Below, piece after piece: positions 14,636 to 32,738 of a DNA stretch of 64,000 nt. The stretch covers positions 174,220 through 238,219 of IMG/VR virus record IMGVR_UViG_3300021962_000021, one strand, 5' to 3'. The translations under genes were made by a program, and so were the position numbers. Below the pieces are notes generated by a model. It had not been told where the DNA came from and did no database searches. It saw only the letters and a list, made by a program, of their open reading frames with translations. The number at the start of each line of letters is the position of its first letter. Position 1 is the stretch's first letter.

Positions 14636-14640
14636 TCTTA

Positions 14641-14648: not shown

Positions 14649-14665
14649 GATTGAAACTATTATAA

Positions 14666-15742: not shown

Positions 15743-15774
15743 TTTGGTAAACCCAAAAAAAATTCGTATATTAT
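15743..15774 (+). promoter_or_regulatory. Putative Bacteroidota-type sigma-A promoter (-33 TTTG, -7 TATATTAT)
   Basis: TTTG at 15743, 20-nt spacer, TATATTAT at 15767, upstream of the portal gene. Confidence 0.55.
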
Positions 15775-15791
15775 AAAAAATTATATCATAG

Positions 15792-17528: not shown

Positions 17529-17546
17529 TAAACGAACAGAAAAGTA

Positions 17547-17554
17547 TATTTATA
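17547..17554 (+). promoter_or_regulatory. Putative late promoter motif TATTTATA
   Basis: Exact motif in the gap after the portal gene. Confidence 0.6.
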
Positions 17555-17575
17555 TCTGATAAATAATATCAATTG

Positions 17576-18445: not shown

Positions 18446-18447
18446 AA

Positions 18448-18708
18448 ATGACAAATTATAGAATATATAAAGTAAGTAATTTTACTTCTTCTAGTGTTTG
18501 GACTAAATTGGGTAACGAAGCATCTGCAAGTTTGCCTGTAGCTACTGCTTGGGGTATTATGACTCCGGTTGGAATGGCAACATCGGGTAGTGTAACAGTT
18601 GAAGGTGGTGGAGATTTGGTTTTACAATCACTTATTCCTGGTCAAATATATCCATGTTACCCAACGGCTATTAGAGTATCTATGGGAACAGGTTCTGTAT
18701 TATCATAA
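18448..18708 (+). CDS. Small hypothetical protein, possibly virion-associated
   Basis: 86-aa ORF tightly packed in the operon; carries TSSS, SAS, SGS and TGS motifs. Confidence 0.6.
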   Translation: MTNYRIYKVSNFTSSSVWTKLGNEASASLPVATAWGIMTPVGMATSGSVTVEGGGDLVLQSLIPGQIYPCYPTAIRVSMGTGSVLS

Positions 18709-18726
18709 ATTTAAACGGAGAATAAA

Positions 18727-19320
18727 ATGCCAGCAGTAAGTAAAGCACAACAAAGATTTATGGGAATGGTTCACGCCGCACAAAAGGGTGAAGAACCTGC
18801 ATCACCTGAAGTTGCAAAAGTAGCAGCAGATATGGATAAAAAATCTGCTAAAGACTTCGCATCAACATCTCATAAAGGATTGCCTGATAAAAAATCAGAA
18901 CAATTAAATAAAATTAAAGAAATCATTCGTAAGATAGTTAGAGAAAGAATGATTGATGAAATGAATGTTACCGGAAATGTTCAAGGATATAATACACCCA
19001 ATGCATTTTCAAAAGGTGATGATAATAAAAAGAAAGCTAAGAAAGCAGCTGATATGGTGGGTTATAGTGTAGTTAATGAAAACCGTTGGTTAGAATTAAA
19101 AAGAGATGAATCAACTGCACAGGCAAAAATTGGTAGAGGCATATCCAACATCAATAGACAATTAAAAGAAATGGAAAGATTTCTTAATTGGTATGGAAAA
19201 ATTAAAAATGAGAGTGGTGTAGATAACAAAAGTTATTGGAAAAGAACTAATAACAATATTTATGCTATAAAGGAAAGATTAATCAAATTAGACCAAAAAA
19301 TCAGACAAATATCAGAATAA
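18727..19320 (+). CDS. Hypothetical head-core protein (DUF3008-like N-terminal module)
   Basis: MPAVSKAQQRFMGMV...AKDFAST.HKGLP; GGAG SD upstream. Confidence 0.65.
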   Translation: MPAVSKAQQRFMGMVHAAQKGEEPASPEVAKVAADMDKKSAKDFASTSHKGLPDKKSEQLNKIKEIIRKIVRERMIDEMNVTGNVQGYNTPNAFSKGDDNKKKAKKAADMVGYSVVNENRWLELKRDESTAQAKIGRGISNINRQLKEMERFLNWYGKIKNESGVDNKSYWKRTNNNIYAIKERLIKLDQKIRQISE

Positions 19321-19321
19321 G

Positions 19322-19627
19322 ATGAATATAAATCAATTAAAAGAACTTATTAAGCAAGTTGTTAAAGAAGAAAGTGATTACCAACAATTGTTCAAACATA
19401 TGTTGGATAAAACTGGTAAATCTATTCCTGATATGAGTGATGCAGAAAAAGTTAAATTTTTCCAAGCTGTTGATAAAGCAGCAAAAGCAAAATCAGAAGG
19501 TAGATTGACAGGTTTGCCTGAAGAATTGAGTGACAAGCAAAAGCAAATTGATGTTGATAAAGATGGAGAAATAGAAGGTTCGGATTTAGCAGCATTAAGA
19601 GCAAAGAACGAAGAAAAAAAAAAGTAA
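19322..19627 (+). CDS. Small head-region protein with EF-hand-like loop, ending at a slippery A10G site
   Basis: DVDKDGEIEGSD matches a DxDxDG Ca-binding loop; ends GAA AAA AAA AAG TAA. Confidence 0.7.
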   Translation: MNINQLKELIKQVVKEESDYQQLFKHMLDKTGKSIPDMSDAEKVKFFQAVDKAAKAKSEGRLTGLPEELSDKQKQIDVDKDGEIEGSDLAALRAKNEEKKK

Positions 19628-19641
19628 ATGAGAACCTTGCT

Positions 19642-20034
19642 TTGGGTATTATAACTACTTTGAGTAGTATAATCATAGGTAAGGTTATATTTTATTATCT
19701 TTATGATTTGACAAAAAAGGGAATAAATTATTTCTCTGGAAAGAAAAATTATAAAGAAGCGGTTAAGAAAATTTTAGATTCAATGTCAAACAACAAAAGT
19801 TTGATATCAGATATATCTAAAATGATAGAAATGAACGGTGAGATTGATAATACAACTGCTAATAAAATTATAAATTTACCATATGTTAGAACACAAATAA
19901 TAAAAATGAGTGATTCTACAAATGGTGAATTAACCGAAACCGAATTAGAAAACGAATTAAAAACAATTCTAATTAAATCGTGGAGTGATTTGGGAAACAA
20001 AGCAGTAGATAAAATAAAAAAAGATTTGAAATAA
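19642..20034 (+). CDS. Hypothetical protein, probably a -1 frameshift extension of 19322..19627
   Basis: TTG start only; the frame is open back through the A-run (K V N E N L A L G I I); hydrophobic N-terminal segment. Confidence 0.55.
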   Translation: MGIITTLSSIIIGKVIFYYLYDLTKKGINYFSGKKNYKEAVKKILDSMSNNKSLISDISKMIEMNGEIDNTTANKIINLPYVRTQIIKMSDSTNGELTETELENELKTILIKSWSDLGNKAVDKIKKDLK

Positions 20035-20625
20035 ATGAATAAGGGATTATTAATAGAAACACACTTATTTGAAGCAAAAATTGTTCAAGAAGAAAATGGA
20101 ACTTATTTAGTTCAAGGTATTCTTCAAAGAGCTGGTGCACCAAATCAAAACCACAGAAGATATCCAAAAGAAATCTTAATGAGAGAGTGTCAAAAATATG
20201 AACAACTCATTAAAGAAAGAAGAGCATTGGGTGAGTTAGACCATCCGGATTCTCCTGTAATCAACCTTAAAAATGTATCACATAACATCAGAGAAATTTG
20301 GTGGGATGGTGATGATGTGATGGGTAAAGTGGAAATTCTTTCAACTCCTTCTGGTAATATTTTAAGAGAATTATTAAAAAACAATATTCGTTTGGGTATA
20401 TCTTCAAGAGGTTTAGGTTCTGTTAAAGAATTGAAAGATGGAACTGTAATGGTTCAGGAAGACTTTGAATTAGTTGGTTGGGATTTTGTTTCTAACCCAT
20501 CTACACATGGAGCATTTATGGCACCAATCAATGAATCCAAACAATGGAAACAAATGGCAGAAGAATGTGGTAAGTGGTGTAAAGCACAAGATTTAATGAG
20601 AGAAATTATAATTGAATTAAATTAA
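20035..20625 (+). CDS. gp21: Prohead core protease (T4 gp21-like)
   Basis: NHRRYP, ALGELDHP, VSHNI, GISSRGLGS, DFVSNPS motifs. Confidence 0.95.
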   Translation: MNKGLLIETHLFEAKIVQEENGTYLVQGILQRAGAPNQNHRRYPKEILMRECQKYEQLIKERRALGELDHPDSPVINLKNVSHNIREIWWDGDDVMGKVEILSTPSGNILRELLKNNIRLGISSRGLGSVKELKDGTVMVQEDFELVGWDFVSNPSTHGAFMAPINESKQWKQMAEECGKWCKAQDLMREIIIELN

Positions 20626-20626
20626 T

Positions 20627-20878
20627 ATGGCAAAGTTAGTAAATTTAATACCTGGTAGAGAAGTAGTAAAAGAAGAATTAGATGATATGGATGTATCACT
20701 ACCGGCTTCTGCAGAAAGATTTTTAGATAGAGCAATTAAAGCATTAAAAGGATATAATCTTAATAGAAGAAAAGAACAATATGTAATTGCAAAATTAATT
20801 GATGCATTAGATATGACACCTTCAGAATTAATGCAAGCGGTTCAAAAATTAAAAAGAAATAAAATTGTAAAGAAATAA
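20627..20878 (+). CDS. Small hypothetical head-region protein
   Basis: Tightly packed ORF; N-terminus MAKLVNLI...VVKEE. Confidence 0.6.
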   Translation: MAKLVNLIPGREVVKEELDDMDVSLPASAERFLDRAIKALKGYNLNRRKEQYVIAKLIDALDMTPSELMQAVQKLKRNKIVKK

Positions 20879-20880
20879 TT

Positions 20881-21315
20881 ATGATAAAGTTAAAAAATAT
20901 ATTAAGAGAAACAGAAGAGTTTCAACAACTTCCATCTGAAATAAAAAAACATTTTTTAGAAATTATTTCTACATTTGGACAGCATAGAGAATCTATGACT
21001 AGAAAATCAGATATCAGACAAGTTGCAGAAACATTGGGTGGTATTGCAGATGCTGCACAAGAATATACTTTGAGAGAAGGTGGTGATTGGTTTGATAGAG
21101 TGACTATTAAGAGAAATATGAACGAACTTAAAAAGTTACAAACTGCATTTGAAAAAGAAGCAGTAGAAGCAAAATCACAAGAACAAAGATTAGAAGCTCT
21201 TTACGAAGATATGGGTCATGTATTGGGTAGATATTTTGAAATTGCAGAAATCACCGAAGAACAAATGAAACAAAGATTAGGATTACAAGAAACTAAAAAA
21301 TCTAAAAAGAAATAA
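20881..21315 (+). CDS. Hypothetical coiled-coil head-region protein
   Basis: N-terminus MIKLKNILRE; DWFD.VTIKRNM...LYEDMGHVLGRYFEI. Confidence 0.65.
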   Translation: MIKLKNILRETEEFQQLPSEIKKHFLEIISTFGQHRESMTRKSDIRQVAETLGGIADAAQEYTLREGGDWFDRVTIKRNMNELKKLQTAFEKEAVEAKSQEQRLEALYEDMGHVLGRYFEIAEITEEQMKQRLGLQETKKSKKK

Positions 21316-21686
21316 TGGAACAATTAGCATCTTTATTATTACATAGTAGAACACAGGCACACGTATTTCATGTAGGACAGAGTGGTGTGGGTTCTGATGC
21401 AAGACATAGAGCATTGGGTGATTATTATGATGCAATTGGTGGAATCGTTGATGGTTTGGTTGAAGTATATCAAGGACAATATGGTTTGATTAAATTACAA
21501 CCTGTTAGTGGTTTGGATACAAATAGTGAAATGAAAAATGTAATTGCATATTTTGTTAAATTAATTGCAGCGGTAGAAAAGTTGAGAAAAGATGATAAAT
21601 TACAAATGAGTTGGTTACAAAATGATATTGATACGGTTGTATCGTTATTATATAAAACAAAATATAGATTAGAAAATCTACAATAA
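21315..21686 (+). CDS. Ferritin/Dps-like four-helix protein (DUF5856-like)
   Basis: QAHVFH...HRALGDYYD...DGLVEVYQGQYG...LQNDID...YRL. Confidence 0.7.
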   Translation: MEQLASLLLHSRTQAHVFHVGQSGVGSDARHRALGDYYDAIGGIVDGLVEVYQGQYGLIKLQPVSGLDTNSEMKNVIAYFVKLIAAVEKLRKDDKLQMSWLQNDIDTVVSLLYKTKYRLENLQ

Positions 21687-21689
21687 GTT

Positions 21690-21869
21690 ATGTTGATTGT
21701 AAGTGTAAAAGGTGGTAACATAGAAGGTGCATTAAAAGAATATAAAAAGAAAGTTCAATCCGTAAAACAAATTGAACAATTAAGAGAAAGAAAAAATTAC
21801 ACCAAACCATCTGTAAAAAATAGGTTACAAAAAGAAGAAGCTAAAAGGAAAAATAAATTATTTTTTTAA
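21690..21869 (+). CDS. rpsU: Ribosomal protein bS21 (phage-encoded), 59 aa, not in ORF track
   Basis: MLIVSVKGGNIEGALKEYKKKVQSVKQIEQLRERKNYTKPSVKNRLQKEEAKRKNKLFF: NI..ALK.YK.K, LR.R and KPS motifs; MLI start as in Bacteroidota bS21. Confidence 0.9.
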   Translation: MLIVSVKGGNIEGALKEYKKKVQSVKQIEQLRERKNYTKPSVKNRLQKEEAKRKNKLFF

Positions 21870-21891
21870 TTTTCTTTAGTTTTCTATAAAA

Positions 21892-21899
21892 TATTTATA
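21892..21899 (+). promoter_or_regulatory. Putative late promoter motif TATTTATA
   Basis: Exact motif about 160 nt upstream of the scaffold gene. Confidence 0.6.
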
Positions 21900-22058
21900 T
21901 ATATTATCAAATATCCCATTATTATATGGGATTTATTATTACGACATAGTTGGTTAATGAATACCCTTCTCTTATAAGGTGTGACCGAACAACCAACATT
22001 ATTCTATTGGAGTTTCCTTTCGAAATAACTTCACGAACAAATTTAAGGAGAAAAACAA

Positions 22059-23288
22059 ATGGCAAATTCAAAATTATTGAAAGAAGCAATTGCTGATGCT
22101 AAGGCTGTTAAAGAAACTGCTCTTGCAAACGCAAAACTCGCTCTTGAAGAAGCATTTACTCCAAGACTTCAATCTATCTTATCTCAAAAGTTAAGAGCAG
22201 AAGCTGAAGCAGAAGAGAAAGATGCAGAAAAAGTAGACGAGGAATTGGATTCTACAGGCATTGGTTCTTCTACCTCTAATCCTAAATTAGACGCGCATAC
22301 TGAATTCGAAGCGGGTTCTACTAAAACAACATCAGGTGAGCCAGGTGCTCAAGTTGATGATTACAAAAAAGTAGCAGATATCAACGAAGAAGAAGGTATG
22401 GAAATGGGTGATGATGAAGCTGAAAAGCAAAATGAAATCGCTCAATTAAAAGCTAGATTAGCAGAATTAGAAGCAGGTGATGACCAAATGGCTGATGAAG
22501 AACCAAAAATGGAAGCTGATGATGAAATGGGTTCAGATGATGAATTCAATTTTGATTCAGAAGAAGGTGATGGTGAAGAATACGATGTTACCGGTAACGA
22601 AGAAGAAGATACCGAAGATGACATGGATTTAGAAGCTATCATCAGAGAATTAGAAGCACAATTAGGTGAAGAAGAAGATTCAGAAGAAGAAATGCCTGCA
22701 GATGATTCAGCAATGGCTGAAAATTTAGCAGACGGTTCAGAAGCTGGAACTGACAAAGGTGAAGACCCTAAAGTGGTTGTAACTAACGAAGAAGAAGAAA
22801 AAGAAGATGAAAAAGATGAAAAGAATGAAGTAATCGACTTAGAAGAAATTCTTCGTGAAATGGAAGCTGATATGAAAGGTGATGAAGATGAGAAAAAAGA
22901 CGAATCTTTAAAATCTGAATTAAACGAAGCTTACAAGACTATCAAATCTTTACAAAAAACTATTAACGAAGTAAACTTATTAAACGCTAAGTTATTATTC
23001 GCTAATAAATTATTCAGAGCACACAACATGACTAACGAACAAAAAGTTAAAGTGATTGAAACTTTGGATAGAACAAAATCAGTTAGAGAAGTTAAATTGG
23101 TTTACTCTACATTAGTAGAAAACTTCAAATATTCTTCAACTAACAAAGTTGCTAAAAAAGCAATCTCAGAAGGAATCGCTTCTAAAGCAGTTAAATCAAC
23201 TGCACCAAAAGCAGCAGCTAAGCAAGTAATTGCAGAATCTGCAGATTTCGCTGATAGATTTAAAAAATTAGCAGGAATTATTAAGTAA
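22059..23288 (+). CDS. Prohead scaffolding protein (gp22-like)
   Basis: Very acidic coiled-coil protein directly before the major capsid gene; C-terminal RFKKLAGI; strong AAGGAG SD. Confidence 0.85.
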   Translation: MANSKLLKEAIADAKAVKETALANAKLALEEAFTPRLQSILSQKLRAEAEAEEKDAEKVDEELDSTGIGSSTSNPKLDAHTEFEAGSTKTTSGEPGAQVDDYKKVADINEEEGMEMGDDEAEKQNEIAQLKARLAELEAGDDQMADEEPKMEADDEMGSDDEFNFDSEEGDGEEYDVTGNEEEDTEDDMDLEAIIRELEAQLGEEEDSEEEMPADDSAMAENLADGSEAGTDKGEDPKVVVTNEEEEKEDEKDEKNEVIDLEEILREMEADMKGDEDEKKDESLKSELNEAYKTIKSLQKTINEVNLLNAKLLFANKLFRAHNMTNEQKVKVIETLDRTKSVREVKLVYSTLVENFKYSSTNKVAKKAISEGIASKAVKSTAPKAAAKQVIAESADFADRFKKLAGIIK

Positions 23289-23318
23289 TTAACAAAAAAT
23301 AATTAAAAATTAATTAAA

Positions 23319-24935
23319 ATGGATTTAAAACAAATTATGTCAGGCAAAAACCCACAAAACGTAATGCTTGAGCAAACTAGAGGTTTGAAAGCAAAGTGGG
23401 AAAAAACCGGCTTATTAGAAGGAGTAGGTTCTGAAACTTCTAAGCACGGTATGGCTGTAATGCTTGAAAACCAAGCAAAGCAATTACTTGATGAAGCTAC
23501 TAGAACTGGTACTTCAGCAGGTTCAGAAGAGTGGGCAGGTGTAGCTCTTCCATTGGTAAGAAGAATCTTCGGTAGCATCGCTGCAAAAGAATTCGTTTCT
23601 GTTCAACCAATGAACTTACCTTCAGGTCTTATTTTCTATATGGATTTCAAATACGGTACAGCTACATCGGTAGGTAGACCAGCTTCTGGTTCTTCTATGT
23701 TCGGTAACGGTGGTACATTCGGTAAAGATTCTTTATCTCCAGCAGGTAACAAATTGGGTTCTACTCAAACTACTGAAGGCGGTCTTTACGGAGCAGGTAG
23801 ATTTGGATATACAATCAACGATGTAACTTCTGACGCTTTAACAGCAACAGTAACTACAGCTTCTTGGGCTGATGTTAATTTCGATGCTGATTACTCAGCT
23901 TCAGCAGCTGCAGGTGTTATCAGAAAAGTAAAAATTGGTTTACCATCTGATGCTGATTTCAACGCAGTAAGAGCTTTCTCTTTAACTGGTTCAGTTGACC
24001 AATTACCACAATTTACTTCAATTGATTCTTTAGGTTCTGCATCTTTCTTCGTATCAGCTTCTGTAGCAACAGTAGTACATGGTGCAGGTGGATACGGTAA
24101 TCCAAAAGTAAACTATTCTAAGCAACCAACTGATATCACAAGAGGTGATTTCGAAGATAGAGGTTCTGATTTAGCGATTCCTGAAATCGAATTAGAATTG
24201 AAGTCTGAACCAATCGTTGCTAAGACTAGAAAGTTAAAAGCAATCTGGACTCCAGAATTGGCACAAGACTTAAACGCTTACCATTCAGTAGATGCTGAAG
24301 CTGAATTAACTCAAATGTTATCTGAGTATATTTCTTTGGAAATCGACTTAGAAATCTTAGAGATGTTACAGCAAAACGCATTCACAACTGATTATTGGTC
24401 AGCAAGAGTTGGATACGATTACAATGCAGCAGCAGGTGCATTCCAAATCGACTCTAACGCAGCAGCAGCTTCTGCTTACACAAAGAGCACTTGGTATCAA
24501 ACTTTAGGTATTAAATTACAAAAAGTTTCTAACAAGATTCACCAATTAACTATGAGAGGTGGTGCAAACTTCTTAGTTGTATCTCCAAACGTAGCTACAA
24601 TTTTAGAATCTATGAACGGATTCTCTGCAAACCCAGGTAAAGATGCTTTACAATTTGCAGCAGGTGTTACTAATATCGGTTCAATCTCTAACAGATATGA
24701 TGTTTACAAAAACCCATACATGACTGAGAATGTAATCTTATTAGGTTTCAAAGGTTCTAACTTCTTCGAAACAGGTGCTGTATACGCTCCATATGTTCCG
24801 TTGATTATGACTCCATTGGTTTATGACCCAACTAACTTCACTCCAAGAAGAGGTGTTATGACTAGATACGCTAAGAAAATCGTAAGACCAGAGTTCTACG
24901 GTAAGATTGTCGTTGATGGTTTAAACACTTTATAA
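23319..24935 (+). CDS. gp23: Major capsid protein (T4 gp23-like)
   Basis: MLENQ, SVQPMNLPSGLIF, AKTRKLKA.WT.ELAQDL.A.H..DAEAEL, YAPYVPL, GVMTRY. Confidence 0.97.
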   Translation: MDLKQIMSGKNPQNVMLEQTRGLKAKWEKTGLLEGVGSETSKHGMAVMLENQAKQLLDEATRTGTSAGSEEWAGVALPLVRRIFGSIAAKEFVSVQPMNLPSGLIFYMDFKYGTATSVGRPASGSSMFGNGGTFGKDSLSPAGNKLGSTQTTEGGLYGAGRFGYTINDVTSDALTATVTTASWADVNFDADYSASAAAGVIRKVKIGLPSDADFNAVRAFSLTGSVDQLPQFTSIDSLGSASFFVSASVATVVHGAGGYGNPKVNYSKQPTDITRGDFEDRGSDLAIPEIELELKSEPIVAKTRKLKAIWTPELAQDLNAYHSVDAEAELTQMLSEYISLEIDLEILEMLQQNAFTTDYWSARVGYDYNAAAGAFQIDSNAAAASAYTKSTWYQTLGIKLQKVSNKIHQLTMRGGANFLVVSPNVATILESMNGFSANPGKDALQFAAGVTNIGSISNRYDVYKNPYMTENVILLGFKGSNFFETGAVYAPYVPLIMTPLVYDPTNFTPRRGVMTRYAKKIVRPEFYGKIVVDGLNTL

Positions 24936-24976
24936 TCTTTGAGTAGATTAGATAAGTAATAAACTTAACATAAAAG

Positions 24977-25010
24977 AAAAAGGGGAAGTAGAAATACTTT
25001 CCCTTTTTTT
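24977..25010 (+). terminator. Rho-independent terminator after the major capsid gene
   Basis: Stem AAGGGGAAGTA, GAAA loop, TACTTTCCCTT, then a T-tract. Confidence 0.85.
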
Positions 25011-25044
25011 ATTTAATATGGTAAATTCTCCATATATATGTGTA

Positions 25045-25917
25045 ATGGAAAAGCAAATTATATTTAAAGCGTATGAACTATACGAACATTCTATTGATGA
25101 ATCAAATCGTAGGTCAGATTCATATGTAATGGCAAAACAACCAGATGGTGAATTTGGTTATTTTAATATAAATCAATTTGCTTTAACTGGTTCAAATGTT
25201 TTTGTTGGAAACCAAACTATTACTGGTTCATTTTTAGTAAGTGGTTCAACAACCCAAATTGGTAACAATAGTTTATTAGGTAATACATTTTTAAGTGGTA
25301 ATATTGATGTAAGTGGTTCAACAAATTTCCATAATCATACAATTACAATGACAGGTTCGATGTATACGAGTGGTTCACAAACTATCACTGGTTCATTGGA
25401 TATTAAAGGAAATGTAAATGTAGCAAGTGGCTCTGAATTTTATTTAGCAGGAAACAAATTATTTAATTACGGGCAATTTAGTGATACAACTACACAAAGT
25501 GGTTCGGCAAATACTGCATATGCAAAAAAATTAAATACAATTGATTTTTCACACAATGTTGTAATAGAAAATGGTACAAGAATTAAAGTATTAAATACCG
25601 GAATATATAATTTACAATTTTCATCTCAATTATCAAATACGGCAAACACAAACATTACATTTGATATATGGTTAGCATATACTGGAAGTAATGTTGCAAA
25701 CTCAAATACACAAGTTGATGTAAATAAATCAGCAGGACAATTGGGTCGTTCAGTTGCAGCTTGGAATTTTATGTTACCAATTCAAGCAAATGATTATTTA
25801 GAGTTAATGTGGAGTTGTAATGCAGATACAGGTCAATTGGCATCGATGGGAACTCAAACAAATCCAATAAGACCGGCAATTCCATCGGTTATTGCAACAT
25901 TAACTCAAATAGGCTAA
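25045..25917 (+). CDS. Putative virion structural or decoration protein with TGS/SGS repeats
   Basis: Likely ATG at 25045 (the track starts at 25018); repeated xTGS/xSGS beta units; C-terminal TGIYNLQFSSQL...AAWNF...DYLELMW domain. Confidence 0.6.
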   Translation: MEKQIIFKAYELYEHSIDESNRRSDSYVMAKQPDGEFGYFNINQFALTGSNVFVGNQTITGSFLVSGSTTQIGNNSLLGNTFLSGNIDVSGSTNFHNHTITMTGSMYTSGSQTITGSLDIKGNVNVASGSEFYLAGNKLFNYGQFSDTTTQSGSANTAYAKKLNTIDFSHNVVIENGTRIKVLNTGIYNLQFSSQLSNTANTNITFDIWLAYTGSNVANSNTQVDVNKSAGQLGRSVAAWNFMLPIQANDYLELMWSCNADTGQLASMGTQTNPIRPAIPSVIATLTQIG

Positions 25918-25936
25918 CATTCTTTTTTTATTTGTA

Positions 25937-25944
25937 TATTTATA
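25937..25944 (+). promoter_or_regulatory. Putative late promoter motif TATTTATA
   Basis: Exact motif before 25974. Confidence 0.6.
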
Positions 25945-25973
25945 GTAGTAAAACTCTATAAATTTAATAAATA

Positions 25974-27170
25974 ATGTCATATAACAATTATTGGTCACCA
26001 TCCGTTTCAAGTTCATTTATATCTGGTAGTTCAACTCCATTTGGAATTTATGATGGTGATGCTCAATTTAGAAGTGATGCACCAAAAACAGCAACTTGGG
26101 TAGCAAAAAGATTGGGATATCCTATTGTTAATATAGAATTGGATAATGAGCAAATTTGGGCATGTTTTGAAGAAGCAACATCGGAATATTCTGCACAAGT
26201 AAATCAATTCAATTTAAGAAATAACTTAGATATCTTAAAAGGACAACCGAAGACGGCAAGAGATAATTATTCACAAACTCTTGTTGATGGTTCTTTCTTA
26301 CCTACTGTGGTTAGAATGTCACAACAATACGGAACATTAGCAGGTGTAGGCGGAAATACTTCAATCAAAAAAGCATATATAAATTTAACATCATCCGTTC
26401 AAATATACGATTTGATGACAACCGCATTTGATGCATCCACATCACAATCGTTTTCGACATTATTTACAGGAAGTTCTACAATTGATGTAACAAAAGTATT
26501 TCATGAAGCAGTTCCTGCGATTACTCGTTTTTTTGACCCATATTCGGTTGGTGCACAAGGAACTTTAAATTTAATTTCTGAATTAGGATTTGGTAATTAT
26601 TCACCTGCAGCACAATTCTTAATGATGCCTCTTTACGAAGATGTATTGAGAATGCAGCATATTGAATTCAATGACCATATAAGAAAATCGGCACATACAT
26701 TTAATATAGTTGATAATAAATTAGAAATATTTCCTGTTCCAACACAAGATTCTCCTGGAAAAATCTATTTTGAATATATGAGTAGAGATGAGTTTGAACA
26801 TAATTCGCAAACTGTTCAAGCGGATTCACTTTCTGATTATTCGGATGTTCCATATGATTTTATTCAATATTCAAATATAAATGATGTTGGTAAGCAATGG
26901 ATTAGAAAATATACACTAGCGTTATCTAAGGAATTATTAGGAGCAATTAGAGAAAAATATAATTCAGTTCCAATTCCAGATGGTGAAGTTAGTTTAGATG
27001 GTGCAGCATTGAGGTCAGAAGCACAGGTTGAAAAAGATGCGTTAATCACACAATTGAGAGAAAACTTAGAAGAATTGAGTAGAAAGAATGTGATGGAAAA
27101 CAAAGCACATGAAGCAGACCATCAGCAAGAAATGTTAAGAAAAGTTCCATTAAAATTATATGTAGGATAA
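25974..27170 (+). CDS. Neck protein (gp13-like head-tail adaptor)
   Basis: RLGYPIVNIELDNEQI, WIRKYTLALSKELLG.IR.KY, V.LDG..L..EA. Confidence 0.8.
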   Translation: MSYNNYWSPSVSSSFISGSSTPFGIYDGDAQFRSDAPKTATWVAKRLGYPIVNIELDNEQIWACFEEATSEYSAQVNQFNLRNNLDILKGQPKTARDNYSQTLVDGSFLPTVVRMSQQYGTLAGVGGNTSIKKAYINLTSSVQIYDLMTTAFDASTSQSFSTLFTGSSTIDVTKVFHEAVPAITRFFDPYSVGAQGTLNLISELGFGNYSPAAQFLMMPLYEDVLRMQHIEFNDHIRKSAHTFNIVDNKLEIFPVPTQDSPGKIYFEYMSRDEFEHNSQTVQADSLSDYSDVPYDFIQYSNINDVGKQWIRKYTLALSKELLGAIREKYNSVPIPDGEVSLDGAALRSEAQVEKDALITQLRENLEELSRKNVMENKAHEADHQQEMLRKVPLKLYVG

Positions 27171-27171
27171 T

Positions 27172-27642
27172 ATGCCAAAATTTTTAGTAGGTAGAGATAT
27201 AGATTTTTTTAGAAATGTAGCTAGGGAATTAGTAGAAACCGTAGTTCAAAACACTTGCGTTTTATATAAAATAAATTTAAATGAAACAAAAGTAAACATA
27301 TATGGAGAAGCTATGAACAAAACTTGGCACAGAGGTATTGAATTATATTGTTTAATCAATAAAGAACCAGAAACTGTATCATACGAAGGTTTTGGTCCTG
27401 AAACAAATCAAAATATAGAATTTCGTTTTGATAGAGAACAATGTAGAGATGCAAATGCATATCCTGAAATTGGTGATGTTATTTACTTTAATGATTCTTA
27501 TTTTGAAATAGATAATACAAATGAAATTCAATTTGTGGGTGGATTACCAGGAACAGATAACGAAAGAAGAAACTGGAGTATTATTTGTTCTACATTTATG
27601 GTATCTAAATCTAATCTTAATATAGAAGAAAGAATAAATTAA
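27172..27642 (+). CDS. Neck/head-closure protein (gp14-like)
   Basis: Follows the gp13-like gene; NIYGEA, PEIGDVI, FEI motifs. Confidence 0.65.
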   Translation: MPKFLVGRDIDFFRNVARELVETVVQNTCVLYKINLNETKVNIYGEAMNKTWHRGIELYCLINKEPETVSYEGFGPETNQNIEFRFDREQCRDANAYPEIGDVIYFNDSYFEIDNTNEIQFVGGLPGTDNERRNWSIICSTFMVSKSNLNIEERIN

Positions 27643-27647
27643 AAGAA

Positions 27648-28769
27648 ATGTCAGTAAATCCATTAAGACCCGATTTTAATAGAGGCAAAGAAATAAAATC
27701 TACAAAAAGCGACCTTAAACAAAGTGTTACTCTTTTTGATATAGATTATGCCATGATGTCTTATTTAGAGGATACGGTTTTACCAACTCTAAAAGATGGA
27801 CAAGGAACTTTAGTAAAAATTCCAGTTATATATGGTAATTCGGAAAGATGGAATGGTTCTCGTAGACAAGGTGTTTATAGAGATAATAAAGGTAAAATAC
27901 AATTACCATTATTAATGATTAGAAGAACATCAATTGCAAAAGATGATACAATGCCTATGCTAAATAGACATGTTTCATATGCCGGAATTACAAAATATTC
28001 AAAAGATAACAGATATGATAGATTTACAGCATTGGGCGGTGGAGTTCAACCTAAAAAAGAAATTTATAGAATTACAATGCCAGATTATGTGGAAGTGAAC
28101 TATGATTGTATGTGTTGGACATCTTATACGGAACAATTAAACGAAGTAATTGAACATCTTAATTTTACATCAACATATTGGGGAGATAAAGATAAATTTA
28201 AATTTAGAACATCGGTTTCTGATTTTAATGTTGTAAATGAAGTTGGAGAAGGAACGGAAAGAATTAATAGAGTTGAATTTTCTTTAAATGTAAAGGCTTA
28301 TTTATTACCAGAAAAATTTGATGGTGAATTGACTACTAAAAAATCAATGTCAATTAAAAAATTAGTTGTTGCAACCGAAGTAGATTTAACTAGTGGTAAT
28401 GGTAGATTGGAAGGATTATTAACAACACCATCTCCATATTATGATAATAAAGATTTGATTGATTTTCTTTCATTAAATAATAGTAAAGCACAAAATCCAA
28501 TAGCAAATAATACAATAACATTTTCTAATATTAAATGTATAAAAACACCAGCTACATTATCATCATATGTTACGGGTGGAATTGTCATAGGAAGTGATAC
28601 ATATGATATAAAAGTTTACATAAACAGTACAAGATATTATGTGGGAACGCATTTTTCGGTTACTTTATCATCCAACGCATTAACTTTAAATTTTAATTCT
28701 ACAAACTTAGGATTTACAGTTACATCTACGGATGAAATTATTATAACAGGAAAATTTATTGATGTTTAA
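27648..28769 (+). CDS. Tail completion/sheath terminator protein (gp15-like) with C-terminal extension
   Basis: KIPVIYGNSERW, LPLLMIRRTSI, Q.NEVIE motifs; position after the neck genes. Confidence 0.65.
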   Translation: MSVNPLRPDFNRGKEIKSTKSDLKQSVTLFDIDYAMMSYLEDTVLPTLKDGQGTLVKIPVIYGNSERWNGSRRQGVYRDNKGKIQLPLLMIRRTSIAKDDTMPMLNRHVSYAGITKYSKDNRYDRFTALGGGVQPKKEIYRITMPDYVEVNYDCMCWTSYTEQLNEVIEHLNFTSTYWGDKDKFKFRTSVSDFNVVNEVGEGTERINRVEFSLNVKAYLLPEKFDGELTTKKSMSIKKLVVATEVDLTSGNGRLEGLLTTPSPYYDNKDLIDFLSLNNSKAQNPIANNTITFSNIKCIKTPATLSSYVTGGIVIGSDTYDIKVYINSTRYYVGTHFSVTLSSNALTLNFNSTNLGFTVTSTDEIIITGKFIDV

Positions 28770-29098
28770 TGAAACGAAGTTTATTAGATATTACTCAAAA
28801 ATTAAGTAGAAAACCTGGAAAAACTGTATTAACCCCATATAATTTAACAGATTCTACTTATTACATTTATGAAGCCAAAGGTTGGAGATTTGTTTCTTTA
28901 TTAAGAGAGATTGAATATAGAAGCACGCAAGATAGCGTGACAGTTTATATAAATACGCTTTCTATAAGTAATGTGGATTTTGTTATAGAACAAACGGCAT
29001 CTGGATTATTATTTAAATTTATAAAAAATAATTTTGAATATCAACTAGATGATGATGATTATATTGAAGTAAAAGGAGATATAGAAAGATATGCTTAA
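28769..29098 (+). CDS. Hypothetical structural-region protein
   Basis: Overlapping start/stop coupling; C-terminal LDDDDYIEVKG resembles the VTSTDEIIITGK end of the upstream gene. Confidence 0.55.
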   Translation: MKRSLLDITQKLSRKPGKTVLTPYNLTDSTYYIYEAKGWRFVSLLREIEYRSTQDSVTVYINTLSISNVDFVIEQTASGLLFKFIKNNFEYQLDDDDYIEVKGDIERYA

Positions 29099-29603
29099 TC
29101 AATTTAATTCAAATACTAGAAAGTTAAATAGAGTAATCAAAAAAATAAATTTAAATAATTTATCTGGTTCTCTAAACGATATTAATCTAAATTTGGATTT
29201 ATCGGGTAGTTTATTGAATATTAAATTACCCACAACTTCATCATATCAATCCAATACAAAATCTAATCCAAATCCAACAAAATTAGTAAATAATAAAAAT
29301 ACTATATCTAATTTTCATAATGAAATTTTAATTCATAGTGCAAGATATGTTAGAATGGGTGTTGATACATTTGATAATACGGCAAACACTTTAACAATAT
29401 ATAATGCACAGACAGATTACGGAACGGAAGGAGCATCGCCTGATAATTTTGAAATAATGGTATATGGTTTACATATTCCTGGAAATTTTAAAGTTGAAGA
29501 TATTGGAAATAATGTTGTGATAACATTGGGAGATAGATATATTGATTTTGATAATGTTACCCTAAGTGATATTTATGTTTTTGGAAAATTAATAAGTATC
29601 TAA
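29091..29603 (+). CDS. Hypothetical structural-region protein
   Basis: Coupled ORF; LSGSL repeats; ends DIYVFGK, similar to its neighbours. Confidence 0.55.
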   Translation: MLNQFNSNTRKLNRVIKKINLNNLSGSLNDINLNLDLSGSLLNIKLPTTSSYQSNTKSNPNPTKLVNNKNTISNFHNEILIHSARYVRMGVDTFDNTANTLTIYNAQTDYGTEGASPDNFEIMVYGLHIPGNFKVEDIGNNVVITLGDRYIDFDNVTLSDIYVFGKLISI

Positions 29604-29619
29604 ATGTTAGATAAAAAGA

Positions 29620-29627
29620 TATTTATA
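29620..29627 (+). promoter_or_regulatory. Putative late promoter motif TATTTATA
   Basis: Exact motif 4 nt before the ATG at 29632. Confidence 0.55.
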
Positions 29628-29631
29628 AAAT

Positions 29632-29955
29632 ATGGCAAACTTAATTAGATTAAAACAAATAGAAAGTGGTTCGCAATTAAATACGGCAGCAAGTGTTGGA
29701 GCAGATTTTAGTGCATCTGTAAATAATATCGTATCACAATCAATTGAAACAACTTTTTCCGCATCAATTGTTCAAATAATTACAAATAATGTAGGAGCAG
29801 TTTTACCTGACGGTGTGGTAAGTGGTTCACAACAAGTAATTGATATATTAATACCTTTAAATCAATTCACAGCATCATTAAACGATACCTACGCAACCGA
29901 TGCAGAATTGGCAACATCACAATCCAATTTGAATGTAGATATGGGTGAATGGTAA
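29632..29955 (+). CDS. Small fibre-associated protein
   Basis: LPDGVVSGSQQV motif shared with the fibre genes; ends DMGEW. Confidence 0.6.
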   Translation: MANLIRLKQIESGSQLNTAASVGADFSASVNNIVSQSIETTFSASIVQIITNNVGAVLPDGVVSGSQQVIDILIPLNQFTASLNDTYATDAELATSQSNLNVDMGEW

Positions 29956-29993
29956 TATATTTTAATTTTTAATATTGTTAGTTAAAAAAATGA

Positions 29994-30001
29994 TATTTAT
30001 A
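29994..30001 (+). promoter_or_regulatory. Putative late promoter motif TATTTATA
   Basis: Exact motif before 30039. Confidence 0.6.
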
Positions 30002-30038
30002 GATTGAATAACTATACTTAAACGGAGAATAAGAAAAT

Positions 30039-32072
30039 ATGGCACAAATTATTAAACATAGACGTGGTTCGTTAGAAAACCTTAGTCAAGTAACATCATC
30101 AATACAAAAAGGTGAATTAGTAATAGCATCGGGTTCATCAAATCTGAGTGTAACAAACGGTTCATCAATTGTATTTGCAGCTGCTGCAGATGGACAACTA
30201 CAAGCAGTAAACAGAATACTTGTAGGAGCATCGGCACCGGCATCATTCCCAAATGTAACATACAATGGATTAGTAGCAGGTGTTCCATATTATGAAAGCA
30301 CTAGTGGTTCTTTGTGGATTTTAGGAACTGATTCAAATACCAAACTTAATTTAATTGGTAACATAAATTCATTCTCTCAATCCGTAGATAGTAGATTGGA
30401 TTCAGTTGAAGCATCTTTAGGTGGTGGTGGTGATATCGGTAGTTCGGTAACATTCTTAAACCAATTTACAGCAAGTGCAACAATTAGATTAAATAACTTA
30501 GAATCTACATCAGCAAGTGTAAATGGGCACATAGCAGATATAAACTCATATACATCATCTGCAAATACTTTAAATAGTTTACAAACTACTAGAATTGACC
30601 AATTAGCAGCAGCAACTTCATCTGTTAATAACTTTACATCATCTGCAACAAATAGATTAAATAATTTAGAATCTACATCTGCAAGTGTAAACGGCCATAT
30701 AGTAGATATAAATTCGTATACATCATCTTTAAAAGCAGCATTAACTGCAAGTGGTGCAAATGTAATATTTAGTGGTAATGTAACAATTCCTGGTAATTTA
30801 ACAGTTGCTGGAACACAAACCATTGTTAATTCTACAACTGTCCAAATCGGTGATAATATCATTGAATTGAATGGTAGTGGTGCAGCAAATGGTGGTATTA
30901 TGGTAAAGGATGCAACCAATCCTAATACTGCAACTGGTTCTTTATTGTGGGATACTACAAACGATTATTGGAAAGCAGGTATAAGTGGTTCAGAAGTTAA
31001 AATATTAAGAGCAGGTGGTGATGATGTTGTAAGTGGTTCATCTCAAATTACAATCTCATCAACAACAGGATATTCTGCATTTAGTTCTTCTATCTCAACA
31101 AATATAGTAGAATTATTTGGAACGGCATCAAATCACGAAGGAAGATTAGATACAATTGAAGCATCTATTGCAGGTGGAGCAGTTTCTACAAGAATTGACC
31201 AATTAGCAGCAGCAACTGCATCGGTTAATAGTTTTACTCAATCTACATTAGGACATATTGCTGATATAAATTCATATACGGCATCAAATGATACCCTAAA
31301 TACTTTACAATCTACAAGAATTAACCAATTAGCAGCATTGACTGCATCGGTTAGCAGTAGATTAGACCAACTTTCTACCGATAGTGGTTCTCAAAATACA
31401 AGAATTACTACATTAGAAAGTAAAGCAACTACATTACAAACTTATACGGCAAGTGTTGATGGACACATTGCAGATATAAATGCATATACTTCTTCTAACA
31501 ATACTACAAATACTGCACAAAATAATAGATTATCAAATATTGAAGCATTTACTTCATCATTTGGAACATCTTTCTCAACATCAGTAGATAGTAGATTAGA
31601 TACTTTAGAAGGGACAGGAACGATACAAGGTGTTGGAACTGGAAATCAAGTAACATTTGCAAAAGTAACAACTTCCGGAGATGTAGTGGTGGGTGGTGAT
31701 TTGGTGGTGCAAGGTAATACTGTAACATTAAATACAGCAACATTAGTAGTTGAAGATAAAACAATTCAATTAGCTAGTGGTTCTACAAACGCAGCTACAG
31801 CAAACGGAGCAGGTATTGAAGTAATCGGTGCAAGTGCAACATTTACTTATGATTCTACACCAAATGCATGGACTGCTAATATTCCAATTTCAGCATCAGC
31901 AGTGACAGCATCTGTTAATGTTCCTGGTTTTGGTTCTTCAAAAAGATTAGCATTTAGAGCAGCAACTGGTAATTTGGATTTCATTGCAGCAGCAACGACT
32001 ACAGGAGATATTGCTCAATGGGATGGAACAAATTTTGTGATGAGTAATGTTATAGATGGTGGAACATTCTAA
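30039..32072 (+). CDS. Fibre-like virion protein (Ser/Thr-rich coiled coil with beta repeats)
   Basis: IIKHRRG...GEL N-terminal anchor, SVDSRL heptads, GNLTVAGTQT...IGDNIIELN modules, ends IDGGTF. Confidence 0.75.
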   Translation: MAQIIKHRRGSLENLSQVTSSIQKGELVIASGSSNLSVTNGSSIVFAAAADGQLQAVNRILVGASAPASFPNVTYNGLVAGVPYYESTSGSLWILGTDSNTKLNLIGNINSFSQSVDSRLDSVEASLGGGGDIGSSVTFLNQFTASATIRLNNLESTSASVNGHIADINSYTSSANTLNSLQTTRIDQLAAATSSVNNFTSSATNRLNNLESTSASVNGHIVDINSYTSSLKAALTASGANVIFSGNVTIPGNLTVAGTQTIVNSTTVQIGDNIIELNGSGAANGGIMVKDATNPNTATGSLLWDTTNDYWKAGISGSEVKILRAGGDDVVSGSSQITISSTTGYSAFSSSISTNIVELFGTASNHEGRLDTIEASIAGGAVSTRIDQLAAATASVNSFTQSTLGHIADINSYTASNDTLNTLQSTRINQLAALTASVSSRLDQLSTDSGSQNTRITTLESKATTLQTYTASVDGHIADINAYTSSNNTTNTAQNNRLSNIEAFTSSFGTSFSTSVDSRLDTLEGTGTIQGVGTGNQVTFAKVTTSGDVVVGGDLVVQGNTVTLNTATLVVEDKTIQLASGSTNAATANGAGIEVIGASATFTYDSTPNAWTANIPISASAVTASVNVPGFGSSKRLAFRAATGNLDFIAAATTTGDIAQWDGTNFVMSNVIDGGTF

Positions 32073-32093
32073 AATTTTTAATTATATTTAAAG

Positions 32094-32117
32094 ACCCTTC
32101 TTCGGAAGGGTTTTTTA
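32094..32117 (+). terminator. Rho-independent terminator with C(UUCG)G tetraloop
   Basis: ACCCTTC-TTCG-GAAGGGT followed by a T-tract. Confidence 0.9.
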
Positions 32118-32188
32118 TTTTCAAAAAGTATATTTATTGAAGTAGTATATACTACCTTTTTGTTATATAACCACAGAATAGACTATAT

Positions 32189-32707: not shown

Positions 32708-32710
32708 CGA

Positions 32711-32718
32711 TATTTATA
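32711..32718 (+). promoter_or_regulatory. Putative late promoter motif TATTTATA
   Basis: Exact motif before 32739. Confidence 0.6.
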
Positions 32719-32738
32719 CAAAACAGAAATAATATTAG

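What the first reader, a model, noticed from the sequence alone, without database searches (positions are those of the whole stretch)
18711..30032. Shine-Dalgarno sequences confined to a few late genes
Most leaders are A/T-only (e.g. major capsid AAAAATTAATTAAAATG), as in Bacteroidota. The scaffold gene has TAAGGAG, and the 18727 and 30039 genes share an identical 15-mer TTAAACGGAGAATAA (18711 and 30018). Flavobacterial ribosomes keep the anti-SD occluded, so these leaders may respond only after ribosome remodelling, or the 15-mer may be a protein-binding operator.
Basis: partly seen in the sequence, partly recalled or inferred. Interest (0 to 1): 0.6.

Follow-up and report, generated by a model that had tools for sequence, protein, structure and literature searches.

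The report
Rare SD-like words in phage leaders
In this T4-like jumbo phage of a probably Bacteroidota host, the three ribosome-binding-like words are real but the shared 15-mer is not conserved, and the scaffold-gene one lies at the end of a newly recognised, conserved folded mRNA leader next to a phage copy of ribosomal protein bS21.

Summary
The literal observation holds. The 15-mer is exact at 18711 and 30018, and TAAGGAG lies 8 nt before the scaffold-like gene at 22059. Leaders are A/T-rich with no general SD signal.

GGAG occurs in 5 of 99 fully intergenic leaders, against 0.4 expected from leader composition but about 2.5 from the genome-wide density. It is not confined to late genes.

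In related phages the GGAG of the 15-mer is kept in 1 of 17 leaders of the 18727 gene and 28% of the 30039 leaders. A shared operator is therefore not supported. The 30039 copy lies behind an invariant ATATTTATA promoter-like box.

The scaffold word is semi-conserved: AAGGA(G/A) in about 70% of 87 unique leaders, lost in several lineages. It lies in the unpaired tail of a four-helix leader RNA with strong covariation and no Rfam match.

Immediately upstream is a phage bS21 gene. Its product has Arg where Bacteroidia bS21 has Tyr54, the residue that helps occlude the anti-SD.

Pairing energies (-8.2 and -6.6 kcal/mol) are far weaker than the below -13 kcal/mol reported for bS21-responsive SDs. 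bS21 presence and SD-like presence co-occur only loosely. The ribosome-remodelling idea stays possible for the scaffold gene only, and untested.

The parts
18711..18725 (+). 15-mer copy 1 (TTAAACGGAGAATAA) in the 18-nt spacer before the DUF3008-like gene. GGAG is 6 nt before the ATG.
   Evidence: GGAG kept in 1 of 17 unique orthologous leaders. Relatives differ by an 8-nt indel covering GGAGAATA.
18727..19320 (+). 197-aa gene with a DUF3008-like N-terminus, in the head module.
   Evidence: PF11450 at 22.2 bits, below the cut-off of 24. Several PHROGs of unknown function at E 1e-20 to 1e-23.
21690..21869 (+). Phage-encoded ribosomal protein bS21 (59 aa), same strand as the head genes, with an SD-less leader.
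   Evidence: PF01165 at 48.8-50 bits against a cut-off of 27. Best solved match is F. johnsoniae bS21, 7JIL. Arg at the Tyr54-equivalent position, counted as 12 residues after the invariant KPS motif.
21871..21908 (+). Promoter-like block: a conserved T-rich/A-rich stretch followed by an ATAT(A/T)TATTATC box. The window also has ATATTTATA at 21891-21899.
   Evidence: Nearly invariant in 87 unique relatives. In relatives without bS21 it is preceded by a terminator-like hairpin. Motif statistics.
21913..22033 (+). Four-helix leader RNA. H1 is 21913-21919 with 21926-21932. H2 outer is 21949-21955 with 21991-21997. H2 inner is 21962-21968 with 21976-21983. H3 is 22008-22014 with 22027-22033.
   Evidence: Covariation: 97.1% of cells paired, 13 of 28 pairs changed on both sides, 0 of 500 shuffles as high, and slid controls 34-49% paired. 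H1 variants. RNAalifold. Coordinates. No Rfam match.
22044..22050 (+). TAAGGAG, an SD-like word in the unpaired A-rich tail of the leader, 8 nt before the ATG.
   Evidence: At least 4 nt of SD core in 81% of 26 leaders, at least 6 nt in 35%. Tail classes in 87 leaders. Duplex -8.2 kcal/mol. Paired with UUUCCU of the H3 loop in the centroid fold.
22059..23288 (+). 409-aa acidic scaffold-like (T4 gp22-like) gene between the prohead protease and the major capsid gene.
   Evidence: Position and composition. No Pfam or PHROG hit. N-terminus shared with the genes preceding the capsid gene in phages immuto and Mel-JY01.
23319..24935 (+). Major capsid protein gene with a leader made only of A and T.
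   Evidence: phrog_138 at E 1e-73. No SD core in 45 unique orthologous leaders.
29993..30001 (+). ATATTTATA promoter-like box for the 30039 gene.
   Evidence: The core ATATTTAT is invariant in all 21 unique orthologous upstream regions. 17 copies in the window, all on the + strand, against 5.2 expected.
30006..30012 (+). GAATAAC box 1, 4 nt after the promoter-like box.
   Evidence: Present in most orthologous leaders, and also after the promoter-like box at window 45747 and genome 45760.
30018..30032 (+). 15-mer copy 2. It overlaps GAATAA box 2. GGAG is 11 nt before the ATG.
   Evidence: The conserved core in relatives is (G)AGAATAAC. GGAG is kept in 28%.
30039..32072 (+). 677-aa coiled-coil protein at the head of the tail-fibre gene block.
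   Evidence: DUF7310 at 36.9 bits, below cut-off. The next genes downstream hit tail-fibre PHROGs.

Best explanation
The window is the structural arm of a 238-kb T4-like phage whose host, probably a member of Bacteroidota, starts translation without SD pairing. Nearly all leaders are A/U-rich and SD-free. The three flagged words are not one system.

(1) The 15-mer is a lineage-specific resemblance between two purine-rich translation-initiation regions. At 30018 it lies in the 5' UTR made from a conserved ATATTTATA promoter-like box and overlaps the second of two GAATAAC boxes. That box, not GGAG, is the part that relatives keep. At 18711 it sits in an 18-nt spacer that varies by indels among relatives.

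(2) TAAGGAG before the scaffold-like gene is the last conserved block of a leader of about 150 nt. The leader appears to be transcribed from a promoter-like block just after the phage bS21 gene, and it folds into four covarying helices. The folded part is the deeply conserved, presumably functional element; its role is inferred to be mRNA stability or control of scaffold and capsid expression. The AAGGA(G/A) word is an accessory, moderately strong SD-like element that several lineages have lost.

Shown: the sequences, the statistics, the conservation patterns, the covariation and the bS21 identity. Inferred: the host phylum, promoter function, the transcript 5' end, and any effect on translation.
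For: - Genome and gene identities: (T4 gp20-type portal, protease, capsid, bS21).
- SD depletion and flat G profile.
- Poor conservation of GGAG in the 15-mer (1 of 17 and 28%), with GAGAATAAC and ATATTTAT conserved instead.
- Promoter-like motif: 24 of 40 genomic TATTTATA copies lie within 60 nt upstream of a start, against 2.9 expected. 17 of 17 ATATTTATA copies in the window are on the + strand, against 5.2 expected.
- Leader conservation and structure.
- The folded leader persists where the SD-like word is absent: clade L331/L340/L415, class C, and L087/L107.
- It also persists in Microcystis phage Mel-JY01, with compensatory changes in H2 and H3.
- Flavobacterium phage immuto has the same promoter-plus-hairpin layout, no SD and no bS21 in this module.
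Against: - GGAG in intergenic leaders exceeds the leader-composition expectation about twelve-fold (5 against 0.39). Three of the five are the flagged late genes, so pure accident is not a comfortable account.
- AAGGA is retained in about 70% of 87 unique scaffold leaders, while every other late leader has lost any SD.
- The bS21 gene is adjacent, and its product lacks Tyr54.
- bS21-positive loci carry the word more often: 61 of 70 against 5 of 12 once mispositioned cases are removed.
- A Chitinophagaceae MAG has AAAGGAG (-9.2 kcal/mol) before its own rpsU, so an SD of this strength occurs in the known bS21-sensing context.
- No RNA data could be obtained, so promoter use and the leader's 5' end are unverified.
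Confidence: 0.55

Rival explanations
1. Ribosome remodelling, the reader's first idea, narrowed to the scaffold gene. Phage bS21 carries Arg in place of the Bacteroidia-specific Tyr54. It replaces host bS21 late in infection and releases the 3' tail of 16S rRNA. SD-bearing late mRNAs, the scaffold gene above all, are then translated preferentially.
For: - The bS21 gene lies directly upstream of the SD-bearing leader.
- All 59 unique phage bS21 sequences have Arg 12 residues after the KPS motif, where Fluviicola and Chitinophagaceae MAG bS21 have Tyr54.
- Y54A ribosomes translate strong-SD reporters 1.7- to 3-fold better (PMC9976891).
- Loose co-occurrence of bS21 and the SD-like word.
- Spacing of 8 nt, and a duplex of -8.2 kcal/mol close to the -9.2 kcal/mol of a natural Chitinophagaceae rpsU leader.
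Against: - PMC9976891 reports that only extended SDs (below -13 kcal/mol) respond, and that a weak-SD mRNA does not.
- The commonest variant is the weaker AAGGAA.
- Loci L136, L158 and L154 keep TAAGGAG or CAAGGAG with no bS21 upstream.
- L087, L107, L130, L148 and class B have bS21 but no SD at the right place.
- The capsid gene and about 95% of genes have no SD, so bS21 cannot mainly serve SD reading.
- Phe or Tyr at positions 57-59 might replace Tyr54; Chen et al. (PMC9723584) scored an aromatic residue in all their phage bS21.
Confidence: 0.17
2. RNA switch. The AAGGAG word pairs with the pyrimidine stretch UUCCUU in the H3 loop, which resembles the anti-SD. This forms a pseudoknot or an alternative helix that masks or presents the initiation region. 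On this view the word is conserved for RNA structure, not for the ribosome.
For: - The centroid fold pairs the two stretches.
- There is 5-6 bp of complementarity in the window and about 12 relatives.
- In class B the AAGGA word is lost, but an inserted GGAAC is complementary to GUUCC at the same loop.
- Clades without CC in the loop also lack GG in the tail.
- L106 shows a register shift: CUUAU in the loop with AUAAG in the tail.
Against: - The largest class has only 3-4 bp of complementarity.
- L130, L186, L147, L148 and L124 keep the CC loop but have lost GG.
- The L331 clade has a CCUC loop and no GG in the tail.
- The pattern may simply follow phylogeny.
- The single-sequence fold is not better than shuffles (z -0.64).
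Confidence: 0.1
3. Operator. The 15-mer, or its GAATAA(C) core, is the binding site of a phage regulator, such as a translational repressor or late activator, that co-regulates the 18727 and 30039 genes.
For: - A shared 15-mer with four G/C is expected about 0.01 times (my calculation, as background).
- Two GAATAAC boxes 19-32 nt apart recur in most orthologous 30039 leaders.
- AAUAAC is invariant in the H3 loop and arm of the scaffold leader, even in Mel-JY01 and the L331 clade.
Against: - There are no further copies in the genome with up to 2 mismatches in a leader context.
- The 18711 copy is absent from 15 of 17 orthologous leaders, including the closest relative L007.
- The offset to the ATG differs by 5 nt between the two copies.
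- Much of the GAATAA enrichment near starts comes from stop codons of upstream genes.
- No candidate binding protein was identified.
Confidence: 0.08
4. Relics or chance. The SD-like words are decaying remnants from SD-using T4-like ancestors, or random purine-rich words, with no present function.
For: - The GGAG count in leaders is compatible with the genome-wide density.
- The related phage Mel-JY01 uses GGAG before its scaffold-like, capsid and following genes, including a leader very like the 15-mer. SD-bearing ancestry is therefore plausible.
- There are repeated independent losses by point mutation: AACGA, AAGTA, AAGAA.
Against: - The twelve-fold excess over leader composition.
- AAGGA is retained across relatives whose capsid proteins have diverged about 20%, while all neighbouring leaders are SD-free.
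Confidence: 0.1

Closest known systems
Freshwater bS21-encoding myoviruses of Bacteroidetes (Chen et al. 2022, PMC9723584)
   Same: Large T4-like phages with about 31% GC and many tRNA genes. bS21 is embedded among portal, protease, scaffold and capsid genes. Bacteroidetes hosts are predicted. The idea that phage bS21 redirects late translation was proposed there.
   Different: In the published clades bS21 is consistently on the opposite strand to the head genes; here it is on the same strand. The published proteins are reported to keep an aromatic residue at Tyr54; this family has Arg there by ungapped alignment. That paper does not analyse SD content or leader RNAs.
rpsU autoregulatory extended SD of Flavobacteriia (McNutt et al. 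2023, PMC9976891; PMC13000453)
   Same: An SD-like word on one exceptional gene in an otherwise SD-less system, functionally tied to bS21 occupancy of the ribosome.
   Different: rpsU SDs pair at below -13 kcal/mol and precede the bS21 gene itself. Here pairing is -8.2 kcal/mol, the phage bS21 gene has no SD, and the word precedes the next gene.
T4 late promoters (TATAAATA) and the T4 head gene cluster 20-21-22-23
   Same: T4-type portal, protease, scaffold-like and capsid gene order. A short A/T-only box lies 20-45 nt upstream of late genes, strictly on the coding strand.
   Different: The box reads ATATTTATA rather than TATAAATA (the T4 consensus is from my own knowledge). No gp55/gp33 homologue was searched for. 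T4 late genes have ordinary SDs.
Structured phage mRNA leaders such as the T4 gene 32 pseudoknot operator, or 5' stabiliser hairpins
   Same: A conserved folded 5' UTR in front of an abundantly expressed gene, with a 5'-proximal hairpin and a possible loop-tail pairing next to the initiation region.
   Different: No sequence or Rfam relationship. The ligand or partner is unknown. It has four helices with invariant internal-loop sequences.

Membership tests
Canonical Shine-Dalgarno element | At least 4-6 nt complementary to the 3' tail of 16S rRNA | tested here: met
   AAGGAG gives 6 bp at -8.2 kcal/mol. GGAG gives 4 bp at -6.6 kcal/mol. Both were measured against CACCUCCUUUCU. The host 16S sequence is assumed, not known.
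Canonical Shine-Dalgarno element | Spacing of about 5-10 nt to the start codon | tested here: met
   8 nt at 22059 and 6 nt at 18727. 11 nt at 30039 is borderline. In scaffold leaders of relatives the spacing varies from about 3 to 10 nt.
Canonical Shine-Dalgarno element | Conservation of the word in orthologous leaders | tested here: inconclusive
   Scaffold leader: 81% with at least 4 nt, 35% with at least 6 nt. 18727 leader: 6%. 30039 leader: 28%.
Canonical Shine-Dalgarno element | The host ribosome uses SD-anti-SD pairing | not testable with these tools
   The host is unknown. Bacteroidia ribosomes occlude the anti-SD (PMC7797042, PMC9976891).
bS21-responsive extended SD (rpsU type) | Predicted pairing below -13 kcal/mol | tested here: not met
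   -8.2 and -6.6 kcal/mol, against the threshold stated in PMC9976891. The energy models may differ.
bS21-responsive extended SD (rpsU type) | Higher translation on ribosomes lacking bS21 or carrying mutant bS21 | not testable with these tools
   Needs reporter or in vitro assays.
Ribosomal protein bS21 (PF01165) | Score above the Pfam gathering threshold | tested here: met
   50 bits against a cut-off of 27; 48.8 bits by genome search.
Bacteroidia-type bS21 | Tyr54, which stacks on A1534 | tested here: not met
   Arg at the position 12 residues after KPS in all 59 unique family members. Tyr is there in two Bacteroidota MAG bS21. This rests on an ungapped alignment only.
Shared protein-binding operator | The same word kept at both sites in relatives, or further copies in the genome | tested here: not met
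Known RNA family (Rfam 15) | Covariance-model match for the leader | tested here: not met
   No match at E up to 1 in window 14000-34000.
Conserved structured cis-RNA | Compensatory base changes supporting the helices | tested here: met
   13 of 28 pairs changed on both sides, 97.1% of cells paired, 0 of 500 shuffles as high, slid controls at most 49% paired. H1 variants.

The most novel reading that the evidence does not exclude
A lineage of phage bS21 proteins replaced the Bacteroidia-specific Tyr54 with Arg. When incorporated into host ribosomes it unlocks the normally occluded anti-SD. The phage exploits this through an SD-like word at the end of a dedicated folded leader, switching on scaffold, and possibly capsid, synthesis only after bS21 has been made. 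This would be a virus-driven specialised ribosome with a matched mRNA signal.
Probability: 0.12. Interest if true: 0.85.

Novelty: new member of a known kind. Interest (0 to 1): 0.42.

Why it matters
Why so many aquatic phages carry bS21 is an open question. The only mechanistic model for bS21 in Bacteroidia is anti-SD occlusion and rpsU autoregulation.

This locus offers a compact natural test case. It holds a bS21 variant lacking Tyr54, next to the one late gene that keeps an SD-like word, in a genome that otherwise has none. Reporter and reconstitution experiments in Flavobacterium johnsoniae could test the link directly.

Independently, the four-helix leader is a well-supported new phage RNA motif. 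It occurs in hundreds of freshwater phage contigs and in at least one cultured phage. It controls, or at least precedes, the most abundantly made virion proteins.

The negative results also matter. The identical 15-mer, the most eye-catching feature, is not a conserved signal.

Tried and rejected
No reads were laid, and no transcript ends or expression levels are known.
- Rfam scan of 14000-34000 at E up to 1: nothing.
- Scan of bacterial genomes for the leader 17-mer: 120 listed hits are chance matches without the rest of the element.
- AGAATAA enrichment near starts looked like a motif (17 against 3.8) but is mostly GAA-TAA stop codons of upstream genes.
- Loop-tail pseudoknot: complementarity is too short in the main class to claim.
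- A mini-ORF in the leader starting at the ATG of AATGAATAC: rejected, because relatives differ by 1-2-nt indels inside it.
- bS21 against SD-like association: the raw table is skewed but collapses to about six concordant and five discordant lineages when clades are counted by eye. No formal tree test was run.
- AAAGGAG before 29091 (91% conserved) lies inside the upstream coding sequence, 12 nt from the ATG, with an ATGA overlap. I attribute it to coding constraint.
- The single-sequence fold of the leader is not better than shuffles. Support for the structure comes from covariation only.
- One genome search failed on a wrong handle type and was repeated correctly.

Full report
**What the window is.** The window is the last 64 kb of a 238,219-bp IMG/VR virus record with 31% GC. 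About 90% of ORFs lie on the + strand, and 26 tRNA genes lie at 59-69 kb.

The flagged region is a T4-type head and tail module:
- portal, PF07230, 231 bits
- prohead protease, phrog_207
- an acidic 409-aa scaffold-like gene at 22059
- major capsid protein, phrog_138
- tail-fibre genes from about 32 kb

The closest cultured relatives by capsid protein are Microcystis phage Mel-JY01 (55%), Flavobacterium phage immuto (51%) and Rhodothermus phage RM378 (40%).

A 59-aa bS21 gene (PF01165, 50 bits) lies at 21690-21869, directly upstream of the scaffold-like gene. Its best solved match is F. johnsoniae bS21. It matches bS21 of a Fluviicola MAG (49% identity) and a Chitinophagaceae MAG (46%). It found nothing in an Oscillatoria genome. 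With the SD-free leaders, this points to a Bacteroidota host, but that is an inference.

**Checking the observation.** The 15-mer is exact at 18711-18725 and 30018-30032. These are its only exact copies in the genome. TAAGGAG is at 22044-22050.

Leaders are A/T-rich with no positional G peak. They pair less well with the anti-SD than random positions do.

GGAG at -18..-4 occurs in 5 of 99 fully intergenic leaders. Leader composition predicts 0.39 (P<0.0005). The purine-rich coding strand has GGAG in 2.5% of all 15-nt windows, so the genome-wide rate predicts about 2.5. The refutation criterion 'chance frequency' is met or not depending on the null.

The words are not confined to late genes. 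GGAGG precedes a 77-aa ORF at genome position 1425, and GGGAG precedes a 104-aa ORF at 34714. Two more lie inside upstream coding sequence, before 581 and 29091.

**The 15-mer.** I fetched 80 related loci with the capsid protein (77-97% identity) and read the orthologous leaders.

For the 18727 gene, only 1 of 17 unique relatives keeps GGAG. The closest relative, L007, has an unrelated A/T leader, and L012 lacks the eight letters GGAGAATA altogether.

For the 30039 gene, GGAG is kept in 28% of relatives. What is conserved there is:
- the core ATATTTAT of an ATATTTATA box about 35-45 nt upstream of the ATG, invariant in all relatives
- a GAATAAC box just after it
- a second (G)AGAATAAC box that overlaps the 15-mer

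ATATTTATA occurs 17 times in the window, always on the + strand, against 5.2 expected on both strands. Across the genome, 24 of 40 TATTTATA copies lie within 60 nt upstream of a start, against 2.9 expected. The same box precedes late genes of the cultured Flavobacterium phage immuto. I read it as the phage's promoter core, probably late, but no transcript data were obtainable.

The two 15-mer copies also sit 1 and 6 nt from their start codons. A shared operator or a conserved SD is therefore not supported. The identity is statistically unusual (about 0.01 expected for a 15-mer with four G/C). It is best seen as a lineage-specific resemblance, perhaps produced by a small templated insertion.

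**The scaffold leader.** The 189-nt spacer between bS21 and the scaffold-like gene has a nearly constant length and is highly conserved. A 17-nt core pattern retrieved more copies, and 87 unique versions were aligned.

The spacer contains, in order:
- a promoter-like block
- a 7-bp hairpin H1 with at least five fully compensated variants
- a two-tier helix H2 with invariant internal loops
- a hairpin H3
- an A-rich tail carrying the SD-like word

I tested the structure on 18 diverse sequences, including Mel-JY01 and a distant clade (L331, L340, L415). 97.1% of cells pair, and 13 of 28 pairs show changes on both sides. No shuffle of 500 reaches these values. Sliding the partners drops pairing to 34-49%.

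There is no Rfam match. A possible mini-ORF is broken by indels in relatives. This is a new, well-supported cis-RNA motif of unknown function.

**Is TAAGGAG a Shine-Dalgarno sequence?**

For:
- It has 6 nt of complementarity, 8-nt spacing and an unpaired context in the consensus structure.
- AAGGA(G/A) is retained in about 70% of unique leaders, while the capsid leader has no SD core in 45 of 45 relatives.

Against:
- The commonest form is the weaker AAGGAA.
- The word has been lost by point mutation or replacement in several lineages that keep the folded leader.
- The pairing energy is -8.2 kcal/mol. SDs that respond to bS21-deficient F. johnsoniae ribosomes are reported at below -13 kcal/mol, and a weak-SD mRNA did not respond (PMC9976891).

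One comparison tempers the energy argument. The Chitinophagaceae MAG has AAAGGAG (-9.2 kcal/mol) before its own rpsU.

**The bS21 link.** All 59 unique bS21 proteins of this phage family have Arg 12 residues after the invariant KPS motif. Two Bacteroidota bS21 sequences have Tyr54 at that position. An aromatic residue follows 4-5 positions later.

Tyr54 stacks on A1534 and helps sequester the anti-SD. Y54A ribosomes translate strong-SD reporters better (PMC9976891). Chen et al. (PMC9723584) reported an aromatic residue at this position in all their phage bS21, and an opposite-strand gene orientation. This family therefore differs from the published clades.

Among the 87 leaders, loci with bS21 upstream carry a correctly placed SD-like word in about 61 of 70 cases. 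Loci without bS21 do so in 5 of 12. The distant bS21-less clade and phage immuto also lack the word.

Exceptions run both ways. L136, L158 and L154 keep the word without bS21. L087, L107, L130, L148 and class B have bS21 without the word. The counts are also not phylogenetically independent. The remodelling hypothesis remains possible for this one gene and unsupported for the 15-mer genes.

**An alternative for the word.** In the thermodynamic centroid, AAGGAG pairs with UUUCCU in the H3 loop, which is an anti-SD look-alike. Several clade-level patterns fit such pairing. However, complementarity is only 3-4 bp in the largest class, and there are counter-examples.

**Comparative context.** Mel-JY01 carries a homologous leader and a different type of bS21 in the same module. 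It uses GGAG words before its scaffold-like, capsid and next genes, one of them very like the 15-mer. SD-bearing leaders are thus the ancestral or alternative state in this phage group. The present phage has lost them almost everywhere.

**Verdict.** The operator reading of the 15-mer is not supported. The ribosome-remodelling reading is untested, and plausible only for the scaffold gene.

The most solid new results are:
- the conserved four-helix leader RNA
- the ATATTTATA promoter-like motif
- the Tyr54-to-Arg phage bS21 lineage

No alternative genetic code was used.

Noticed in passing
window 21913-22033 (leader), also L314:3262-3374, L331:6251-6404: A four-helix structured leader RNA lies between bS21 and the scaffold-like gene. 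It is present in at least 87 unique versions in IMG/VR, in cultured Microcystis phage Mel-JY01 and in a bS21-less clade. Covariation is strong and there is no Rfam match.
   Followed up: yes
window, 17 sites, e.g. 14640, 17546, 25936, 29993, 32710, 36654, 45745, 51463, 58086: ATATTTATA occurs 17 times, all on the + strand, against 5.2 expected. Most copies lie 20-45 nt upstream of structural genes. It is probably the phage late-promoter core, close to but not identical with T4's TATAAATA.
   Followed up: partly
window 21690-21869: The phage bS21 has a Bacteroidota-like N-terminal half but a basic C-terminus (..RKNKLF), with Arg at the Tyr54 position. It lies on the same strand as the head genes, unlike the published bS21 phage clades.
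   Followed up: partly
window 30006-30012 and 30026-30032; relatives: Two GAATAA(C) boxes 19-32 nt apart recur in the 30039 leaders of most relatives. AAUAAC is also invariant in the H3 loop and arm of the scaffold leader. This may be a recognition motif.
   Followed up: partly
window 18711-18725 compared with L012, L007, L063 leaders: The 18727 leader varies among close relatives by an 8-nt indel (GGAGAATA present or absent). The upstream gene differs in many relatives, so this may be a recombination junction.
   Followed up: no
window 29070-29090: AAAGGAG lies 12 nt before ATG 29091 and is kept in 91% of relatives. It sits inside the upstream gene, which overlaps the start by ATGA. This is likely coding constraint or translational coupling.
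   Followed up: partly
L314 (Mel-JY01) 1685-1912 and its leaders: Mel-JY01 has rpsU in the same head module and uses GGAG words on most leaders sampled. It is reported as a Microcystis phage although its capsid is closest to this Bacteroidota-type group.
   Followed up: partly
L436 (Chitinophagaceae MAG) and L435 (Fluviicola MAG) rpsU leaders: The Chitinophagaceae rpsU has AAAGGAG (-9.2 kcal/mol) in its leader. The Fluviicola rpsU has none (-2.4 kcal/mol).
   Followed up: no
relatives L021, L085, L088, L123, L154, L155, L176, L181 (5' part of alignment A1): Where bS21 is absent, a terminator-like hairpin (CCCAAAGAAATTTGGG plus a T run) sits immediately before the conserved promoter-like block.
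   Followed up: no
genome 59322-68700 (outside the window): A cluster of 26 tRNA genes. Several short ORFs called there, including one with a GGGGGAG leader, are probably spurious.
   Followed up: no
window 21315-21686: The gene just upstream of bS21 is DUF5856 (45 bits), with a PHROG label of starvation-inducible regulator (Dps-like). It is conserved next to bS21 in relatives.
   Followed up: no
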